Source: Adineta vaga
Lineage: Eukaryota > Animalia > Rotifera
Length of the DNA: 64,000 nt
Direction of reading: 5' to 3'
NCBI GenBank assembly: GCA_021613535.1
Contig: CP075497.1
Location: 2,542,001 to 2,606,000 of the forward strand
Of this stretch, positions 37,740 through 48,071 are shown piece by piece. The translations under genes were made by a program, and so were the position numbers. The notes below the pieces were generated by a model. The model had not been told where the DNA came from. It did no database searches and saw only the letters and a program-made list of their open reading frames with translations. How positions within the stretch are numbered: the first letter of the stretch is position 1; each line of letters opens with the position of its first letter.

Positions 37740-39018
37740 TTAATTGTGAGTAGGAGGAAAATCGAGTAATGATTTACCTTGTTTCTTCCAAGAGGCAATA
37801 GATGCAATGACAATATGTTCACAATTTGCTTGATCGACAATCTATATGATAAATAGAAACAAAACAATGAGTTCATACATCAATCAAAGATGTTAATGAG
37901 ATTCTTAGATGATCAACAAACAAAATATTTTTCTCAAACGAATAATTCTTACTAGAAACCTAAAAAAAACTCGAAATTAAAGATGTTTTTAGGCTTTTTA
38001 ACTATATTTCAAGACCTAACTATGCACATTTTCTAATCATTTTCACCCTGTTCTTGAAAATAAAAGCATACTTTGAGATCAGTAAGATATTGTGTCATTT
38101 CTTTCGTTGAATATAAACTCAATAATTTCACTCGACAATGATGAAGTATATGTATTGTTAAGAAAACGAAGATATATTCACTACCAGCTAAAAATTTCTC
38201 CCAAATACTAAATAAGAAAAAAAGAAGTTCATTCAACATACACATGATTAAAAGAAAAATCTTTACTTTAATAAAGAAATATCATCTGTGATTAATTGAA
38301 AACCATCTTTGAGCCAATTTTCTGGTATATATGCAAAGATATTATGTGTATTTAAATGAAGTAATAATTTTGGTTCATAAAGAAATTCTTCTTGTGCCAT
38401 TTTACCCGCATGATACCGCTATTCGATATGAATAATTAAGATTTTGATTGAACGGAATGTTTTACTTACGTACGAGCAAAGGTAAACGTCGAGTTAGTTG
38501 AACAAATTTATCATAAATTTTACAAGTCATAAACCAACATTCCGCTGTAATTTCTACTCGCTGTTCATTATCATTATCAAGAAATGAACAAATGAAATTC
38601 GCAATTGATAAAAATGGTTCATATTCTTTCTAAGATCCAAATGAAAAAACAAAATTCCTGAACAATTGAATTTTCTTTAAAAAATCTTACTGTTGATGTC
38701 AGTGGAAGTTTAATTCCATGTGAATCTAAGCAATACATAGCAAGAAATTGTTGAGCAATGGGCGTATCACTTTGAAGTATTCACAAGTTGTTAACTAGAT
38801 TGAAGACGTTTGTAAATGTTACAATTAGCTTGATCAACATAGGCACGTGTGGAACGATAGGGAGACTTAATTCCTAATAGGATTTTCCAACAAAGTGGTT
38901 TAAGTTCTGCAAGAATGGAATTTTTTTGTACATGTTGTTTTAATTTTTCAATATGAATTGTGTCTGATTCAAGTAACTCTTTATAAACAGTCTGACTAGT
39001 TCGTTGTATTAATATCAT
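37740..39018 (-). CDS. TBC1D7: TBC1 domain family member 7 (TSC complex subunit)
   Basis: Short TBC-only protein: IEKLKQHV...LKPLCWKILLGIK.PY; IWEKFLAGSEYIFVF; final exon IVDQANCEHIVIASIASWKKQGKSLLDFPPTHN*. Confidence 0.75.
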
Positions 39019-39058
39019 ATCTAGAATATATAAAAAAACAAACAAATCTTTATTTTAC

Positions 39059-40855
39059 TTAATCAATTTCTTGAAAATTTGTCATCGGAGTTTTATCAAA
39101 CGGATGTTCAAGAAGATATTTTACAATTTGAAGAATCATATCATTCGATAGACTTAAAGTAGTTAATAAAGATTTTATAATTTTCGATTCAGTTAAATGA
39201 TTCATTAACATTGGTAGTTTGATGGTTAATCTAAATTATACAATTAATTTCATTGAAATTATTTACAAATACATACAAATGAAGAAGAAATATGATCATA
39301 ATTGTCCACTCATTTGGTTTTAATGTTATATTTTCACTGCTGAAACTAAATAGAAAACAAAATAATAGTTAATTTATGAAATATTCAGAATGAAATTACT
39401 TTAATGTGAGTAAAAATTCCGATAAAACTGATCGTACATCTCGTGCTATTGTTTGATTTGCTTCTTCATTGAAGACTTGCTTGAAACTATTGCAAAGAAC
39501 TTCGATGTTATAAAGGAAAGGAAATAACAAACCATGTCATGAGTTTTTCAGTAACAATTGATAAACGAATTGTTTGTTGAGAGTAGGCGTCAACTGGAGG
39601 TAATATTATAGCAGATGACGATGATGATGCTGTTTCCTGTTAAATACATTTATTACGATGAACGGATAGAAAATAAACCATACTTCAGTTATTTGTTCAC
39701 TTTTTCCAACAAAAAATTCTTTGACTTTAAGTTCATATTGAGTTTGTGTCGTTGTTTTTTGTAATTCTCCTATTGTTGGAAGTTTCTTTTGTGCACGAGC
39801 ATTATCCGATGACATGAGATCTTCGACATCAAGTTTGTTTACTAATTGTTGATATCGTTGAGGATCGAGTGGAATAGCAGATGTCATCGTATTATTTTCG
39901 AGATAATTCAAGCTTTTATTACTTAACCATTCATATAAACAAGTAATCACAAAATCTATTGTGGGATTATCTGTTCGAATAGAATCAGGTAAAGAGATTT
40001 CTTGAAGTTTTTTCTCGACTAAATTTGCTTTTGGAATTTGAGTAGCACGAGATTTATAGTATGCATCACGAGCTATTTGAAGTTTTTCAAATTCATCATC
40101 TTCATCATCCGATGACGAAGATGTTGAAGAACGACGTTGTGGAATTGATCGATTGTAATTTGATTGAGAGATGATCGTACTTGGGTCAGGATGATCTTTA
40201 CTGAAAATGCTTATAATGAGAGAAGAATATTTGTTTTTTAGAAGTTGATTTTACCTAAGAGATTCACGTGTAAGAAGATCAACTTGTAATGAATTCTGTT
40301 GGTCACGTGCCCAAACAGGTGATGAAGGAATTTGTTTTTCGAAATATTTCGATGCTTTGTAACAAAATACCGAACAAAAACACTAGAATTTCAATTAGCA
40401 CTTCGATGAAAAACAACTTAAACTCCTTCATACTCGTCTCTCTGTTGTATCGATTACTTTGTTGACTTTGACATTAATATAATATTGATGAATTGGAGTC
40501 TAAAAATAACGACATCATGTAGATAATTAACATTTGTTAGGCATCATCGTTATACATCTTTGGGTAGTAAATTAGAACAAAGAGGATAACCACATATATA
40601 TCTCAATGCGCGATCTTCATTCACACCTCGATATCGCTCTTGATCAATCAGAATAGCCTACAAGATATATGAATAAGAAAAAGCAAGAATTTCTGATACA
40701 TTATCTATTACCGCATTGATTAACGTTTCATTAGTTACTTTGTCTTCTTCAATTAGCGATATCGCTGTATTCATTGCTTTCTTTTCACATGCTTTTCGTT
40801 GTTCAATTTTAGTTCGGAATGCTTCAGCTTTCGATTGATCGGATGTAGTAGTCAT
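39059..40855 (-). CDS. RPAP2: RNA polymerase II-associated protein 2 / Rtr1 CTD phosphatase
   Basis: RTR1 zinc-finger motif EDRALRYICGYPLCSN...QYYIN..NKVID.TER..FCSVFCYKASKYFEKQI..SPVW.R. C-terminal FSSENITLKPNEWTIM..LL. Stop TAA 39059-39061. Confidence 0.9.
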
Positions 40856-40951
40856 CTGAAATAGAATTCCTAATTAGATCATGTTTATATAACAAAGAAA
40901 ATATCTGGATTTTTTTAAAATATCTATATGTATCACATAAGAATTTGAGAG

Positions 40952-43900
40952 TTACAATTGAATGGAAGGTAAAATACATTGAAGAGTAAAATATTCAGCA
41001 ACAATACAGATATGTAACATGCTATTGTTACAGAAATCTAAATACGAATGAATAGAGAAGAAAACGATGAATAGATTTTTACATACTAAAAACCATTTTT
41101 TCTGCATGAGGTTGTTGAGAATGTAATAATTGAGCAAATTTCTTTATATCTAAACGTACTTCCACTGCTCAATAGAATCTGATGATAATGTTGTATTGGA
41201 TTGCTGTGTAATTGGCAAACCCAGTTGAGAAAGATCATTACCATCATTATCTAAACTTCTCAGTTTATTTCTATATTTTAATTCCGAATCATCATCCTAC
41301 TTGGATCTTGTAGGCCAGTAAAGTAAGTTGCAACTTGAGCTGTATCTGTTTCAATTTTAACCGTCATATCACCGGATTTGTTTGCTTGTAAAGTCTAAAG
41401 AGAAGATGAATATGTAACTATGTGATTACAACTTACTACAAAATTACACATTGCTTTCATTCGATCGATGATATTTTTCAATGTTTTCAATTTTGGAATT
41501 GTAATTGTAATCTAAATTATTTATTTATTTAGACTGATATTAAAACAAGTCACATGATTACATAAGTGTTCTAAGTAGAATGTTTCTTTAGGGTGTATGT
41601 TAATATATGGAATGCCTTAGCAATTCTATATTACAACATTCTAACATATTGACCTTTCTATAAGTATTGACAATGATCATTACAATGAACAACAATCATA
41701 TTTATAGCGAGTACGAGAGAATGATATGGTTCATCGATTGAAAAATACAAGATGAACTCTAGAATGTTATCTTTTCCTTTTCTTAGTGCATTTCTTTGCC
41801 GACTTTTTCTTGCGGCATATTCTGCTAGTTTATTCTTTCTTTTTTTTTTCTCCACTTCATCATAAGAAAAAGCGAAGTACGGAAATCGATCTAATATTTC
41901 TTGTAATCCTTTTTATCATCGCGTCAACACTACTCCAGATAGTTTTAATTGAGATCAACTCTAGCAGCAAAAACAGAAGTTGTTTTCCTCGTTGACTTTT
42001 CTTTTCATTCATTTTCTTCCTTTTCCTTCGTTCTCTATCTCTAGACAGTCTTAGAAATCTGTCAATGATGAGTATTGACTTCGCTCTATACAAGCTTTTC
42101 TATCTGTTAGTCTATGTATGTAAGTGTATGTCTGTGTACTAGAGTTCTTTGCCTTAATATTCTTCATGTTCCCGTTGACGGTAATAATCCACTACCGCTA
42201 GTTTTCTTCTTATTCTTCTGTTCCTTTACAGTAACAAGACGCACATTGCATTTTCCCACTCCTCCTTTCATCATTTCTCTCTCCTCTCTCTCTCTCTCTC
42301 TGTTTCATGCGCTTTTGACTAGTGCACGTCGTTTCTGTTATGAAATAGTAAGCTGCATATTGCCGTACACACATTCATTATATAGTAGACGAAAGAAAGA
42401 GTTTTTTCCTTGTCGGTTAAGATATTACTAAATAGATAACGACAACAACAACAGAAAAAAAAGAAAAGTTTTTGTTCGTCGGTTCATCGAGTTGTATCTT
42501 ATTAGTGAGTAAGTCGTCTGAGTTGAGTTTGACTTAATTTTCTGCTTGAATAGAACATCTTAAGAAAATTATAGAATTGTTTGCTTTATTTTTGATGGCT
42601 CAGTAAATCGATAACATAGAAAATAAACGACAATAATCTTGAGTGTAATAGGAAACGTGACTTGCCTCACTTCAATAGATTGCCAAGGTCATAGAGACGT
42701 AAGAGAAGAAAATGATGATTAATACAATAGGGAAGGAAAGATCGAATCATCCGTAGTGACGTCAACATCAATCGATATGAGTATATATATATATATATAT
42801 AGATATTTAACAGAGCAATGATTTCTTAACAACGAGAATACACAGTAGTTCTTTGACTCTGCAAGATGTTGTTTTTTTCTTGTACGACTCTTTTTATTCG
42901 GTCTCGTTATAATGAGAGAGAAAACGTCGAGTCGAAGACTTTCAATCATTCTGGTATTCGAACTCAGTCGGATAACATGATGAATTACACGACCAAATAT
43001 TAATAGTCGGCACTTTTTCTTTTTCTTTTCTAGTATTATTATCTATTGTCATTCATCGTATTCGATGGATTGTTTTTTAAGAATATTGAAACTATGAGGA
43101 AGAATGCAATGGTGCATCGAAGTGCCTTTTTCTTCTTCCTTTCCTCTTTCTTCATTTCCTAATCATAATTTATTGTCGTCACTTCTTCTAACAATGACTT
43201 TCATTCTTAACATGATTAATTTATCATCATCATCCGTCCATACATCATCATTGTCAGCATGTTCACCATATTTCATTTCAACAAATATTGATATCCGTAC
43301 GACTCATCAATATATTCAACCATGCCCTGTATCAACACCTTGTCAATGTTTATGTGAACTGGAAAGTAAACGTTTATGGATTGATTGTTTTTATCGGCAA
43401 ATGAAAACTTTTCCCACATTTGTCAAAATTCCAACGAATAAAACACGAATCGAATGGAATATTGATTTAGCATTTAATCAATTTGATACAATATCAATGA
43501 ATAAACAACTCAAATGGATTCCTGATAATATGCATATAAGACATTTGGTTTTGTCAGGTTCATTAGCTTATGATCTTATTGTTCAATTGAATTTAACTCA
43601 TCGAAATCTAATTGATGTTTGGCCAAGTCCAACATTTATCCATTATTGATGATCAATGGTCGGATAATTACGAGACTGGTCAATCAGAAGAAGAGGTAAA
43701 AGAAATGTTTTCATCAAAATCACAATGAAATCTCGCTATTTAAACTAGGAAAATAAACAAATTCAAGAACTTTTCAAAGTCAAACGTTCACTTTCTGCAT
43801 CAATCATCGAACGAACACGTTTACTAACTGAATTAACTTTAAAATTACGTGAAAAAAGCAAACGTATCCTTACATTTAATCTATCTCTATCCGGTGAACC

Positions 43901-45662
43901 TCCACCAATTTCAAGTCTTTATCTTGATCATAATTCTCTTGATTCAATTCCTCTCCATGCTTTATATAATGCGACAGGTTTATATGAAATCTATTTATCA
44001 TTCAATAACATTGTTAATCTACCAGCTTATGCATTTGGATTTGCTCATCGTTTAACTCGAGTTGATTTATCCTACAATAGAATCATTTCAATTGATAATT
44101 CAACATTTCAACGACATCCAAATGCATTTGCTGGTCCATTTCTTATTGATTATCTCGATTTATCTCATAATCAAATCAATCTTTTAGAAGCTAATGTTTT
44201 TTCTTATCTAGTAAATTTACGTTTATTAAAATTAGAACATAATCAAATCCGTTCGATTTCTGCACATATATGGACAGGTTTATATCGTTTAAAATATCTT
44301 GATTTATCTCATAATTCAATTGAAAATTTTACTCAAGCTTTCTACAGTGGTTATTTAGATGAATTGAATCATTTAAAAATGACATCAAACAATTTAACTC
44401 AAATTGGTTCTTGTGAATTTTTATCTTTAAAACGATTAACGAAACTAAATCTAAGTGGCAATAATCTAACAACAATTGATACTTGTTCATTCTATGGTCT
44501 TCATCAAACAACGAAAACTTCGCCATTAAATGTTTATCTAAGTGCCAATCAACTTGAAACAATTCATCCGTGTACATTCAAAGATTTTGCAAGATCGACA
44601 ATTTATTTAGAAAATAATCCATTGATATGTAATTGTTCATTTAATTATCTTTTACAAAATCGACAATCCGTAGCTTATACAGGACAAGAATGTCGAGGTG
44701 GATTTGTATATCAAACCGAACAACAAATAAGTTTACCTGCTATTCGTAAAAGCAATTCAACATTAACGAAAAAAACGATCAATATTTCCAGAACATGTCG
44801 AGATTCATTTCAATTCTATAATGATTTATGTTTAAAACTTGATTGTCGAAATGAATGTGCAGCGAATGAACGTTTTATTATTCAAGTAACAACAATACCT
44901 ACACCAAATGGTACATTATATTTCTATCAACAAACATTTCTCTCGATGATTTTCATTGTTCTCATTCATTATAGTCGTTTTCTTATTTTCAGTTGTAATA
45001 TTTGTGATATATGAAAAAAAACAAACAAGGATAGTTTACTTACATCACATGGAGGAATATTTGGAGCTTGAAAATCGATCCTAAAAATAGATCATGCTGA
45101 TTTCTTTTCAAATGAGAAAATAGTTACCAATGTTTATGTGCAAGTAAATGAATAGGAATATCACATGAAAATTGTCGTTCAGTCATTGCTGAAGAAATCT
45201 AAAAAAGATGATCTTCAAATCTTTTTCTTTTTCAAGTTGAATAACTCACAACTTCTGTATCAATACTTAAACATGGATTATTATGTTTTTTAATTAGACG
45301 AAGTTTTAATAATCGAGCTTGTTGTGCTGGTTTGAGAGCACGTAGTAATTCTTCAAACATAATTTCAATATAAATTTCATTGGCTAATGCGGATAGACCA
45401 TCCATGATATAATCATCAAAGAATCGAATCGGATCAAGTTCAATCCAAAGTGATACACCACCACCGAATGATTTATCACCCAAAATTAGAAATAATTTAT
45501 CTGGAGTTAATCGAAGTACACCTGATTTAGCCATTTTTGAAACACCAGTTATAATCTCTGTAGTTTAAGACATATTTTATAAATTGTGTAAAGTAAATAA
45601 TTTGTCTTACTTGTGAATTTATTGATTGTGGTACTATTATGTAATTTAGCACGGAATTTCAT
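40952..45662 (-). CDS. HUS1: Checkpoint clamp (9-1-1) subunit HUS1, split by a 3.5 kb intron (41512-45043)
   Basis: 5' exons MKFRAKL...VLRLTPDKLFLIL...LWIEL...NEIYIE..L.RALK...L.LIKKHNNPCLS...CDIPI...DFQAPNIPPCD|. 3' exons |ITITIPKLKTLKNIIDRMK...QANKSGDMTVKIETD..QVATYF..L...VRLDIKKF...LQCILPSIQL*. Phase-0 join across the long intron. Confidence 0.92.
43104..45014 (+). CDS. Extracellular leucine-rich-repeat protein (LRRNT, ~10 LRRs, LRRCT, hydrophobic C-terminus), nested antisense in the HUS1 intron; apparent frameshift near 43629
   Basis: CP...PCQC.C LRRNT; repeated LxxLxLxxNxI (LDLSHNQI, LKLEHNQI, LNLSGNNL); NPLICNC LRRCT; intron 43696-43749; N-terminal hydrophobic stretch. Confidence 0.85.
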
Positions 45663-45698
45663 TTTAATGAGAAAGAAAATTGATCTAAAACATGAAAA

Positions 45699-47540
45699 TT
45701 AACCTAAATTTTGTTCGGTTTTATTAAATAATCGTGACCACCACGATGTATTGACAATATTTCGTTTAAAAACTCCATTTAAATAACTTTTCACAAGTCG
45801 AAAATCTTTTTGTAAAAAAGGTCGTGCTGCATTAACAAAATCAAAATCCGGATCAAGTTGTCTTCCAATGCCTTCAATAATAATCGTTCCCAATGCTAAT
45901 GTTGTAAAATTCGATTCCATTTGAATATGATATTTTTTTCCTAAATCCAATACATTCCGTAAAACAATTCCAACTTCAATTTGTTTCAATGGCGTATGAA
46001 GAACATTTTCAATTAGTACAGCCATTTCTTTTCGAAAACCAACTTTTGATTGTTCGTCAATTTGAGTTGCATTTGGCGCACGTTCAATTAATAATGTTGC
46101 TGCTTCTGTACTATCATAATTTGCAATTGCACGAAAGAGATCATAGAAATTTCTTTTATCATTTCGATTTAATGAAGAAGTTAAACCAACATCGAGAAAG
46201 ATGATAATAGGTTCATGTGGATCTTGTTCATTAAGACGAACAATAATATTTCCTGGATGAAGATCAGCATGAACCTTACGACGAATGAAAATAGAGAATT
46301 TAATACATTCAGTTGATTCTTTCTACTTACAAAATTATCTACGAAGAGCATTTTGAGATAAGCATTTACACCGAGATATGCTAGTTTCTTTCTCGTCTCT
46401 TTATCTTTACATGTTTCCATGAAATCATTTAATAATTGACCATGTTCATAGCTTTGAAAGAGAATATCTCGTGTCGATGGTAACGATGTATAAACATGTG
46501 GAAACTTAACATTTGATTGATATTTTTGAAAATTTCGTTCGAAAATTTCTAAATTTTTTGTTTCAATTATTAGATTTGTTTGTAATAACATATTTTTTGT
46601 AAATGCTTGAATATTATCTTCAATATTTAACCATTGAAATGTTTCTTTCGAAACAAGTTTTGTTAATAAACGTGTAAAAATATTTAAAATTTTTAAATCC
46701 GAATAAATTCTATTTTGAACACCTGGATGACGAACTTTCATAATTAAATCGAGATTACCAACCTTACATCGATAAACTTGAGCAATAGCACCACTTGCTA
46801 ATGGTTTCGAAAGAAATTGAGATGATGTCGACGATCGAACAATAATTTGATTATCTTTAAGTAATTTCCGTGTTGCAGATTCTGAATGTGCTGGTGCGTT
46901 TGAATGAAGTTCATTGAATATCGAGCAGAATTGAGCAGAGAAAAGATCAGGTCGTGTAGCCATCCATTGACCTAATTTAATAAAGCAGGGACCACAAAAT
47001 TCAAATGATCTAAAAAAATAATAAGAATATGTATCAATTGAGAATTCGATGGAGAAAATCTTACCGTCGTAGTGTATAACACCATCTTTCATAGAATTGT
47101 GGAGCAAATTTATCTTGGATAAAATAGAAGATTAGAACTGGTGTGAAGATAATAATGAGTTTTAATGTACGGAAAAATAAACGTATAGGAACGAGAAATG
47201 CTGATGCACGATTTGAATACAATTCTGAATTGAGTAATTGTTGTGTTTGAGAAAGAAGTATATCAAGTTCAGATTGAGATACAGATTCAGAATTTTCATC
47301 GAAATTTTCTTCCCTTCTATTTCTCTTATTCATCCATAAGAGATCTCGGAGATGATCTTCATAGATAACATAACCAATCGGTATACCAGCCGATACGATA
47401 GTGATCGTTAATGGCCAAAATCGACGATACCATGGACGTATTTGACCATGTCGTGGCAATTCTGATAGATAACGACGAGAATGTGAGAGAAGACCAAATC
47501 GAGAATGACGAATTAAGTGAATAGCTACTCGAGGAAACAT
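45699..47540 (-). CDS. ADCK2: aarF/ABC1 (UbiB) atypical kinase, ADCK2-like, with mitochondrial-type presequence
   Basis: GPCFIKLGQWMATRPDLFS, PLASGAIAQVY, MKVRHPG, LKMLFVDNF|VHADLHPGNI, FLDVGL, IEGIGRQLDP. Arg-rich N-terminus MFPRVAIHLIRHSRF. Confidence 0.85.
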
Positions 47541-48071
47541 AAATAAACGATAAAAATTAGCAATAAATGAATTTCTATCGCAATCACACCACATTTGATA
47601 GATAATTTTGGACCAATAGTGGTATTTAATGGATTAACGATACTTCCAGAAGCAATGATAGATGTCTGTGTCAGTCATCAAATCGAGCGTTAATACAATT
47701 CATTCGATTGATCTGCTTTCTCGTAGAATAGATGATGACTTAGACATGAAAAAAGCTTAACAATTAAATATTATTCATGAAGTATTGCTTTCTAGCTAAT
47801 TTTCTAAATCATATTTGATTTCTGATATTTCTCTATACGAAAATTTCATATTTTTAGAATAAAACAATTCGAAATAATTTAAATGTTTTCTTCTCTAATT
47901 CGAGAACACATCGGTTATTTTCTTCTTTTTTATCTCTTGCATTTGATGACCATAAAGTCGACAAAACAAGAACGCATACAACACAAATACAAAAAAAGAA
48001 AGATGGTAGTCATTATTGACTGTCTTGCTGAATAATTTGTTTGTTTGTGTGTATGTCTATTCGTATACTGT

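What the first reader, a model, noticed from the sequence alone, without database searches (positions are those of the whole stretch)
37740..47540. Candidate four-gene SL trans-spliced operon: ADCK2 > HUS1 > RPAP2 > TBC1D7
Seen: four unrelated housekeeping genes lie head-to-tail on the minus strand. Stop-to-ATG gaps are 36 nt (45698-45663), 96 nt (40951-40856) and 40 nt (39058-39019), too short for a 3' UTR plus promoter plus 5' UTR. Each gap has a T-rich tract and AG acceptor just before the next ATG: TGTTTTAG| 22 nt before the HUS1 ATG, TTCTATTTCAG|ATG for RPAP2, TATATTCTAG|ATATG for TBC1D7. PolyA-like hexamers lie just upstream: AATAAA 45725-45720 inside the ADCK2 CDS end, TATAAA in the HUS1-RPAP2 gap, AATAAA just after the RPAP2 stop. 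Established: this architecture defines operons in nematodes, tunicates and flatworms, and SL trans-splicing is known in bdelloid rotifers. Inference: one polycistronic pre-mRNA resolved by SL addition, possibly driven from RPS9 (531 nt further upstream). I do not know whether this cluster has been described.
Basis: partly seen in the sequence, partly recalled or inferred. Interest (0 to 1): 0.85.

Follow-up and report, generated by a model that had tools for sequence, protein, structure and literature searches.

The report
Spliced-leader operon candidate in bdelloid rotifer
Four unrelated housekeeping genes packed 36-96 bases apart in a bdelloid rotifer genome behave like a sea-squirt-type operon: RNA data show one message ending exactly where the next begins, and the rotifer spliced leader joined to the third gene's start codon. 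The papers I could search report no operons in this phylum.

Summary
ABC1/ADCK2-like, HUS1, RPAP2 and TBC1D7 lie head-to-tail on the minus strand with gaps of 36, 96 and 40 nt, each ending in a pyrimidine tract plus AG.

The genome (6 contigs, 100.8 Mb; the shape suggests Adineta vaga, but no tool named the organism) carries about 59 copies of the bdelloid spliced-leader (SL) exon.

Public RNA contigs show four things:
- SL sequence is fused to the RPAP2 ATG at the predicted acceptor.
- An ADCK2 message carries a poly(A) tail starting at 45684, the base after the predicted HUS1 acceptor AG, and a HUS1 contig starts there.
- Spliced contigs run across ADCK2-HUS1 and HUS1-RPAP2.
- No cis-spliced 5' exon joins either acceptor.

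Two intronless contigs from other lineages also bridge HUS1-RPAP2. Order, gap sizes and acceptors are kept in Adineta ricciae, Rotaria sordida and several metagenomic lineages. A conserved ~110-nt noncoding block lies upstream of ADCK2 only.

Not shown: a single promoter, SL on HUS1 letter by letter, and any RNA for the TBC1D7 junction. A link to RPS9 is unsupported.

The scan has reported similar SL operons elsewhere in this genome. The library I searched holds no report of rotifer operons.

The parts
47560..47680 (-). Conserved noncoding block about 20-140 nt upstream of the ADCK2 ATG. Candidate promoter or leader of the unit.
   Evidence: Blocks GACTnnCnnAGACATCTATC, ATCCAnnAAATACC, ATCCAAAnTTATCTATCA and GAAATCTCATCTATT are kept in 9 lineages including Rotaria sordida. 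No Rfam family matches. Its function is inferred.
45699..47540 (-). Gene 1: ABC1/UbiB-family atypical kinase (ADCK2-like), 3 exons.
   Evidence: Pfam ABC1 on exons 2 and 3. Spliced RNA contigs. Orthologues of 580-609 aa are annotated in other bdelloid genomes.
45663..45698 (-). Junction 1, 36 nt. Acceptor AG at 45686-45685. The ADCK2 poly(A) tail starts at 45684.
   Evidence: X5 contig 16 ends at 45684 followed by 11 A. X2 contig 11 ends at 45686. X5 HUS1 contig 12 begins at about 45686. X1 contig 2 runs straight across the junction. A pyrimidine tract plus AG|AT lies 12-25 nt after the stop in 10 lineages.
40952..45662 (-). Gene 2: HUS1, 8 exons. Introns at 45558-45610, 45199-45249, 45080-45126, 41512-45043, 41395-41436, 41251-41300 and 41038-41086.
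   Evidence: Pfam Hus1. All seven introns appear as joints in RNA contigs, and the 3532-nt one appears in all 4 runs.
40856..40951 (-). Junction 2, 96 nt. Acceptor AG at 40857-40856 abuts the RPAP2 ATG. This is the SL addition site.
   Evidence: X1 contig 1 (135 nt, depth 72) carries TACAACTTACCAAG followed by AG|ATGACT, which is the SL 3' part. X2 contig 6 runs uninterrupted across the gap. HUS1 contigs end at 40870 (X5) and 40905 (X1). tttcag|ATG is conserved.
39059..40855 (-). Gene 3: RPAP2 (Rtr1-type CTD phosphatase), 9 exons by my model.
   Evidence: PDB RPAP2 E 1e-08. The first three introns are seen as joints. Orthologues are annotated with PF04181.
39019..39058 (-). Junction 3, 40 nt. 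Candidate acceptor AG at 39022-39021, 2 nt before the TBC1D7 ATG.
   Evidence: ATTCTAG|ATATGA is invariant in 9 lineages including Rotaria sordida, while the rest of the gap diverges. No RNA was laid here.
37740..39018 (-). Gene 4: TBC1D7-like. In this assembly its first exon lacks one base at each of two sites about 13 nt apart (near 38796 and 38782), which gives an in-frame TAA.
   Evidence: PDB TBC1D7 top hits. Comparison with five relatives' 113-118-aa first exons. Orthologues of 291 aa are annotated downstream of RPAP2.
39959..45073 (+). Antisense LRR gene, not part of the unit. Its body (43034-45073) is nested in the HUS1 intron. In one contig its 5' exon lies at 39959-39988, inside RPAP2 exon 5.
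   Evidence: Contigs cover 43032-45073 with a + strand GT..AG intron at 43694-43746. The X2 loose end matches 39959-39986 with a CAG|GTAAAG donor and a TTTCTAG acceptor. The gene is nested in all relatives examined.

Best explanation
The four genes form a polycistronic transcription unit resolved by spliced-leader trans-splicing, of the kind with little or no intercistronic sequence.

Proposed mechanism:
- Transcription starts upstream of the ADCK2-like gene, probably at the conserved block 20-140 nt before its ATG, and runs through HUS1, RPAP2 and probably TBC1D7.
- Each downstream message gets its 5' end by addition of the single bdelloid SL (GCTTATTACAACTTACCAAGAG) at an AG 0-22 nt before its ATG.
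- Each upstream message is polyadenylated in the same short gap. At junction 1 this happens at the very base where the next exon starts.

Shown here: SL on RPAP2; the ADCK2 poly(A) site at the HUS1 acceptor; RNA that crosses junctions 1 and 2; conservation of the layout.

Inferred: a single promoter; SL on HUS1 and TBC1D7; membership of TBC1D7.
For: - The genome holds about 59 SL exon copies, each followed by a GTAAAT donor. The SL sequence was taken from PMC3795323.
- An RPAP2 contig carries 14 SL letters that run into AG|ATG at 40857/40855.
- An ADCK2 contig ends at 45684 plus an A-run. A HUS1 contig in the same run starts at about 45686.
- The 2484-nt X1 contig joins spliced ADCK2 to all HUS1 exons. 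The 937-nt X2 contig joins spliced HUS1 to spliced RPAP2.
- No joint enters either acceptor from an upstream cis exon in four runs.
- Intronless contigs L035 and L041, from two other lineages, carry HUS1, a 47-50-nt gap and RPAP2. L042 shows that the L035 gap is colinear with genomic DNA.
- Order, gap sizes (45-71 / 90-118 / 40-48 nt) and acceptors are kept in A. ricciae, Rotaria sordida and another annotated genome. More metagenomic lineages keep individual junctions.
- Strong noncoding conservation is found upstream of ADCK2 only.
- Ciona operons have the same poly(A)-at-acceptor boundary and also lack AAUAAA (PMC1488885).
Against: - All RNA evidence comes from assembled contigs, which can merge overlapping transcripts and cannot show a single molecule or a start site.
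- Junction 2 lies inside the intron of the antisense LRR gene, so unstranded k-mers from that pre-mRNA could supply the bridge in A. vaga.
- The SL letters on HUS1 were not displayed. Only 3 unaligned letters remain at that contig's end.
- Junction 3 has no RNA data.
- Contig depths suggest the RPAP2:HUS1 ratio swings from about 6:1 (X1) to about 1:6 (X5). The tool warns that depth is a poor measure.
- A 23-nt block invariant at synonymous sites lies about 42 nt upstream of the junction 1 acceptor, inside the ADCK2 coding end. It could be an embedded control element for HUS1.
- In Didymodactylos the HUS1-RPAP2 gap is 1287 nt.
Confidence: 0.68

Rival explanations
1. The genes are independent but extremely compact. 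Each downstream gene has its own promoter embedded in the 3' part of the upstream gene. It makes a short outron that is removed by SL trans-splicing. Bridging contigs are assemblies of overlapping but separate transcripts.
For: - Contigs cannot prove one molecule (tool caveat).
- The apparent RPAP2:HUS1 depth ratio varies about 40-fold between runs.
- An invariant 23-nt block (ACATCGTGGTGGTCACGATTATT) sits in the ADCK2 coding end about 42 nt before the acceptor.
- An antisense gene evidently starts inside RPAP2 exon 5, so promoters inside coding exons do exist here.
- Didymodactylos has 1.3 kb between HUS1 and RPAP2, so tight spacing is not obligatory.
Against: - At junction 1 the upstream poly(A) site and the downstream 5' end coincide, so both primary transcripts must cross the same base. 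One transcript is the simpler reading, as argued for Ciona in PMC1488885.
- Three independent data sets bridge junction 2 with fully spliced RNA on both sides.
- The only long conserved noncoding block lies upstream of gene 1.
- The invariant 23-nt block is unique in the genome and does not fold better than shuffled sequence.
Confidence: 0.2
2. The unit is shorter than claimed. ADCK2-HUS1-RPAP2 are co-transcribed, but TBC1D7 is separate, or is a decaying copy on this haplotype.
For: - No RNA was laid on junction 3.
- The RNA-derived contig L035 stops 13 nt after the RPAP2 stop instead of running on.
- The window's TBC1D7 first exon has two 1-nt deletions and a premature TAA.
Against: - The 40-48-nt gap and the invariant ATTCTAG|ATATG are kept in 9 lineages including Rotaria. 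That gap leaves no room for a promoter.
- HUS1 shows a similar frame-breaking difference that RNA from all four runs corrects, so the TBC1D7 breaks may be assembly errors or an allele.
Confidence: 0.08
3. The unit starts at RPS9, giving five genes.
For: RPS9 is co-oriented and stays adjacent in every long locus.
Against: - The spacer is 531 nt here and about 390-930 nt in relatives.
- It has its own conserved block next to ADCK2 and a separately conserved stretch right after the RPS9 stop.
- No RNA was examined there.
Confidence: 0.04

Closest known systems
Ciona intestinalis SL-resolved operons (Satou et al. 2006, PMC1488885)
   Same: - A single SL serves all genes.
- The upstream poly(A) site sits directly at the downstream trans-splice acceptor (junction 1 here: ...TTTTAG + A-tail, next exon from 45684).
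- The upstream cistron lacks a conserved AAUAAA.
- Members are unrelated housekeeping genes.
- The evidence is of the same type: a dicistronic cDNA plus an SL-bearing 5' end.
   Different: - Different phylum and an unrelated SL sequence.
- Junction 2 here keeps about 14-49 nt between the apparent HUS1 3' end and the acceptor.
- One member contains a 3.5-kb intron with an antisense gene.
Caenorhabditis elegans SL2-type operons
   Same: Co-oriented genes roughly 100 nt apart. Downstream genes are SL trans-spliced. The upstream gene is polyadenylated within the gap (general description in PMC1488885 and PMC7986045).
   Different: No specialised operon SL is seen. The RPAP2 contig carries the canonical SL. 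Genome variants differ by only 1-2 bases, and no separate SL2-like family was looked for beyond that.
C. elegans SL1-type operons and Oikopleura dioica operons
   Same: Very short or absent intercistronic sequence, and use of the general SL (PMC1488885).
   Different: In C. elegans this is a minor class whose upstream cistrons carry AAUAAA. Oikopleura gaps are 23-30 nt.
Chaetognath operons (PMC12460157, PMC2481426)
   Same: SL trans-splicing with operons of housekeeping genes and no operon-specific SL. Chaetognaths are placed with rotifers in Gnathifera in PMC12460157.
   Different: The SL sequences differ, and those papers consider the origin independent. No homology of the operons was tested.

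Membership tests
SL-resolved eukaryotic operon | Two or more co-oriented genes separated by very short intercistronic DNA | tested here: met
   Gaps of 36, 96 and 40 nt on the minus strand.
SL-resolved eukaryotic operon | Downstream cistrons receive the spliced leader at an acceptor in or at the end of the gap | tested here: inconclusive
   Met for RPAP2: SL letters are fused at 40857/40855. For HUS1, a contig starts at the acceptor but the SL letters were not shown.
SL-resolved eukaryotic operon | The upstream mRNA 3' end forms within the gap | tested here: met
   The ADCK2 contig ends at 45684 with an 11-A tail. HUS1 contigs end at 40870 and 40905, inside gap 2, but no tail is seen. The RNA-derived contig L035 ends 13 nt after the RPAP2 stop.
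SL-resolved eukaryotic operon | RNA continuous across cistron boundaries (polycistronic precursor) | tested here: inconclusive
   Spliced contigs bridge junction 1 (X1) and junction 2 (X2, L035, L041). Assembled contigs do not prove single molecules.
SL-resolved eukaryotic operon | One promoter upstream of the first gene and none for downstream genes | not testable with these tools
   Only indirect evidence: a conserved noncoding block upstream of ADCK2. No start-site or chromatin data were available.
SL-resolved eukaryotic operon | A functional SL RNA gene family in the same genome | tested here: met
   About 59 matches to the published rotifer SL. In every copy read, the exon is followed by a GTAAAT donor and preceded by a shared upstream element.
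Ciona-type operon without intercistronic sequence | The upstream poly(A) addition site coincides with the downstream trans-splice acceptor | tested here: met
   Met at junction 1 only: the tail starts at 45684, directly after AG 45686-45685. Junction 2 appears to keep a short spacer. Junction 3 is untested.
C. elegans SL2-type operon | A specialised second SL is used for downstream cistrons | tested here: not met
   The RPAP2 contig carries the canonical SL sequence. This is a single data point.

The most novel reading that the evidence does not exclude
Bdelloid rotifers use true operons of the Ciona type, where one message's poly(A) site is the next message's trans-splice site. This one has been kept since before Adinetidae and Philodinidae split. 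That would be the first documented operon architecture in phylum Rotifera. It would also raise the question of whether operons go back to the common ancestor shared with chaetognaths.
Probability: 0.6. Interest if true: 0.75.

Novelty: new member of a known kind. Interest (0 to 1): 0.68.

Why it matters
SL trans-splicing in rotifers has been known since 2005. A 2008 table lists operons in rotifers as 'not determined' (PMC2481426). [quoted passage not shown]

A conserved rotifer operon backed by RNA would add a phylum to the short list with SL-resolved operons. It would be a second, independent case of the boundary otherwise typical of Ciona, where the poly(A) site coincides with the acceptor. 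That bears on whether trans-splicing itself makes the upstream 3' end.

It also matters for annotation. Bdelloid gene predictions already fuse or split these genes: one Rotaria record has an ADCK2-HUS1 fusion, another has a HUS1-RPAP2 fusion, and HUS1 is split in two around the nested gene.

Tried and rejected
- **Paralogous copy.** I looked for a second copy of the cluster in the same genome. HUS1 exon 2 and RPAP2 exon 5 each match only their own locus, so no internal comparison was possible.
- **Pfam on short exons.** Single RPAP2 and TBC1D7 exons gave nothing. Solved-structure sequence searches settled RPAP2 and supported TBC1D7. A second TBC1D7 exon gave only noise.
- **SL-encoded N-terminal extensions.** I hoped to see them on HUS1 or TBC1D7 proteins from RNA assemblies. 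None turned up, and no SL letters occur in any fetched locus.
- **Invariant 23-nt block in the ADCK2 coding end.** I tested it as a general motif or hairpin. It is unique in the genome, with hit counts equal to the control, and its fold is no better than shuffles at z +1.1. Synonymous-site identity in the last 10 usable codons ranks 4th of 99 windows, which is suggestive only.
- **CAGACATCTATC as a common promoter word.** It occurs once in the window, which is within chance.
- **Rfam on the RPS9-ADCK2 spacer.** No match.
- **Metagenome scan with HUS1 exon 2.** It found only Adineta-like lineages at 85-94% identity. No monogonont orthologue of RPAP2 was found.
- This alignment included a junk row and is not used.
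Full report
**Observation.** The minus strand of 37740-47540 carries four genes head to tail.
- Gap 1 is 45698-45663 (36 nt), gap 2 is 40951-40856 (96 nt) and gap 3 is 39058-39019 (40 nt).
- Identities were checked exon by exon, by reference. ABC1 matches two ADCK2 exons and Hus1 matches HUS1 exon 2. The RPAP2 zinc-finger exon matches solved RPAP2 at E 1e-08.
- The TBC1D7 first exon has TBC1D7 chains as its five best hits, but only at E 0.03. The intact orthologous exon gives E 2e-06.
- The ADCK2 subfamily assignment was not tested.
- Full-length queries came only from intronless, RNA-derived contigs, by reference.

**Organism and spliced leader.** The window is G000:C6:2542001-2606000 of a 100.8-Mb genome in 6 contigs. 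The shape suggests Adineta vaga, but no tool named the organism.
- The rotifer SL consensus GGCTTATTACAACTTACCAAGAG (Table 1 of PMC3795323) matches 59 places with at most 2 mismatches, against none for the reversed control.
- In the copies I read, the exon is followed by GTAAAT and a conserved about 85-nt tail, and preceded by a shared upstream element. Many copies lie as divergent pairs about 154 nt apart.
- SL trans-splicing machinery is therefore present. None of these genes lies in the window.

**RNA evidence.** One stretch of 6000 bases (40300-46299) was laid, using Logan contigs of four runs from three studies.
1. A 135-nt contig of depth 72 (X1) matches 40737-40857 and continues with letters whose reverse complement is TACAACTTACCAAG. 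With the shared AG this reads ...TACAACTTACCAAGAG|ATGACT. That is the SL fused directly to the RPAP2 start codon at the predicted acceptor.
2. An ADCK2 contig (X5) ends at 45684 followed by eleven A. Another (X2) ends at 45686. The acceptor AG is 45686-45685, so the ADCK2 tail starts at the base where the HUS1 exon would start.
3. The HUS1 contig of the same run (X5, 997 nt) has 76 letters beyond the first intron, so it starts at about 45686. Three further letters do not fit the genome. This is what an SL end would give, but the letters were not shown.
4. A 2484-nt contig (X1) runs from ADCK2 exons through gap 1 and all HUS1 exons to 40905. A 937-nt contig (X2) runs from HUS1 exons through gap 2 into spliced RPAP2.
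5. All introns inside the laid stretch appear as CT..AC joints, including the 3532-nt HUS1 intron in all four runs. No joint brings an upstream cis exon to either acceptor.

The tool warns that contigs show neither single molecules nor starts, and that depth is not a measure of expression.

**Other lineages: layout.** Protein fragments of TBC1D7 exon 1, HUS1 exon 2 and RPAP2 led to genomic loci from other bdelloids.
- The order RPS9 > ADCK2 > HUS1 (with the antisense LRR gene in its large intron) > RPAP2 > TBC1D7 > LIM-homeobox is kept in three places: an Antarctic metagenome lineage (L013), three NCBI assemblies (L024-L026), and Rotaria sordida (L036, L037). Adineta ricciae (L040) keeps the same order, but its contig begins at ADCK2.
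- Gaps are 34/97/41 nt (L013), 67/118/48 (L024), 45/90/40 (A. ricciae) and 71/116/46 (R. sordida).
- Within the gaps, the sequence is diverged except next to the acceptors.
  - Junction 1 has a pyrimidine tract and AG|AT 12-25 nt after the ADCK2 stop in ten lineages.
  - Junction 2 ends in tttcag|ATG in five of six lineages and also has a CTTTGTTAYAT-like word about 35-40 nt upstream.
  - Junction 3 has an invariant ATTCTAG|ATATGA in nine lineages.
- Annotators fused ADCK2 with HUS1 in one Rotaria record and HUS1 with RPAP2 in another (P0160). This is a typical symptom of such spacing.
- In Didymodactylos carnosus, HUS1 and RPAP2 are adjacent and co-oriented but 1287 nt apart. A tgttttag acceptor lies 13 nt before the RPAP2 ATG.

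**Other lineages: independent RNA-derived contigs.**
- L035 (2317 nt, JGI) is intronless. It carries a complete HUS1 (291 aa), a 47-nt gap and a complete RPAP2. It begins G|ATTTT..., as expected for the junction 1 acceptor, and ends 13 nt after the RPAP2 stop.
- L041 (2032 nt, another JGI sample) carries the last 228 HUS1 codons, a 50-nt gap ending tttcag|ATG, and RPAP2.
- L042 is genomic DNA of a lineage close to L035 and shows that the gap is colinear with the genome.
- With the X2 contig, three data sets therefore hold cis-spliced RNA that is continuous across junction 2.

**Head of the cluster.** The 160 nt before the ADCK2 ATG contain four blocks conserved in nine lineages including Rotaria. 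The spacing does not preserve a reading frame, and no Rfam family matches. This is much stronger noncoding conservation than in any of the three gaps. I read it as the control region or leader of the unit, which is an inference. RPS9 lies 531 nt upstream here and about 390-930 nt upstream in relatives, and the stretch right after its stop is separately conserved. Nothing ties RPS9 to the unit.

**Mechanism.** The most likely reading is one primary transcript from upstream of ADCK2. It is cut into messages by SL addition at each acceptor, with polyadenylation in the same gap.
- Junction 1 has the Ciona-type boundary. In Ciona the upstream poly(A) site and the acceptor coincide and AAUAAA is usually absent. 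Satou et al. argue that transcripts of both genes must then cross the boundary, so a given molecule may yield either the upstream or the downstream message (PMC1488885).
- Here the AATAAA in the ADCK2 coding end is not conserved, which fits that picture.
- Junction 2 seems to be processed less efficiently, given the recurring bridged contigs.
- Junction 3 is inferred from conservation only.

**What argues against it.**
- Contigs may merge overlapping transcripts.
- Gap 2 lies in the intron of the antisense LRR transcript, whose reads could supply bridging k-mers in unstranded assemblies.
- Apparent depth ratios between RPAP2 and HUS1 differ widely between runs.
- A 23-nt block invariant at synonymous sites sits about 42 nt before the junction 1 acceptor. 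It is unique in the genome and not a notable hairpin.
- These points keep alive the rival that downstream genes have embedded promoters and short outrons.

**Known or new.** In the library I could search, rotifer operons are 'ND' in a 2008 table (PMC2481426) and 'have not been reported' in 2021 (PMC7986045). A 2025 paper mentions rotifers loosely among lineages with trans-splicing and operonic transcription, without data (PMC12460157). Searches for newer reports found none. Subscription journals are largely outside that library.

Other agents of this scan have reported SL operons at other places in this genome. I treated those as leads only, and the evidence here is from this locus. I file this as a new member of a known kind.

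**Limits.** Read laying and the look-up of sequencing runs allow one call each, and the operators capped the stretch at 6000 bases. As a result, junction 3, the TBC1D7 frame breaks and the ADCK2 5' end were not examined with RNA.

Noticed in passing
window 41161-41170 (HUS1 exon 7): RNA contigs of all four runs carry one extra base at 41167/41168, plus a C>T change at 41168 (41163 in X6), relative to the assembly. With it HUS1 reads in frame (...SIETVEVRLDIKKF). The assembly as written is frameshifted. This is either an assembly error or a defective allele chosen for the haploid reference.
   Followed up: partly
window about 38796 and 38782 (TBC1D7 exon 1): Two single-base gaps 13 nt apart relative to five related lineages. 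They give an in-frame TAA after codon 74, whereas relatives have an open 113-118-aa first exon. No RNA or DNA reads were checked here.
   Followed up: partly
window 39959-39988 (+) and 43034-45073 (+): The antisense LRR gene nested in the HUS1 intron has, in one X2 contig, a 5' exon inside RPAP2 exon 5 (donor CAG|GTAAAG). It is spliced over about 3 kb to 43034. Its pre-mRNA therefore overlaps, in antisense, the RPAP2 5' half, junction 2 and the HUS1 3' exons. Other contigs start at 43021-43042, which suggests a second start.
   Followed up: partly
window 45731-45753 (-), ADCK2 coding end: ACATCGTGGTGGTCACGATTATT is identical in ten lineages, including at four synonymous sites. Among these is the codon TCG, which I would expect to be rare in so AT-rich a genome (codon usage not measured). 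It contains a 6-bp inverted repeat (ATCGTG/CACGAT). It is unique in the genome, and its function is unknown.
   Followed up: partly
window 47940-48010 (-), just after the RPS9 stop: A roughly 50-nt stretch (TTTCTTTTTTTGTATTTGTG.TGTATG.GTT.TTGTTTTGTCGACTT) is nearly identical between the window and L013, although the surrounding spacer has diverged. It may be an RPS9 3' UTR element or a small RNA. No Rfam match.
   Followed up: no
G000 C1, C2, C5, C6 (for example L002, L004, L008): SL RNA genes often sit as divergent inverted pairs with the two SL exons about 154 nt apart, and in clusters (for example C5:9.88-9.93 Mb and C5:10.91-10.93 Mb). A recurrent variant has A instead of C at SL position 10 (TTAAAACTT).
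   Followed up: no
window 40891-40901 and the same place in L013, L018, L024, L036, L040: A CTTTGTTAYAT-like word is conserved about 35-40 nt upstream of the junction 2 acceptor, in otherwise diverged spacer. It is a candidate 3'-end or trans-splicing signal. One HUS1 contig ends about 20 nt downstream of it.
   Followed up: no
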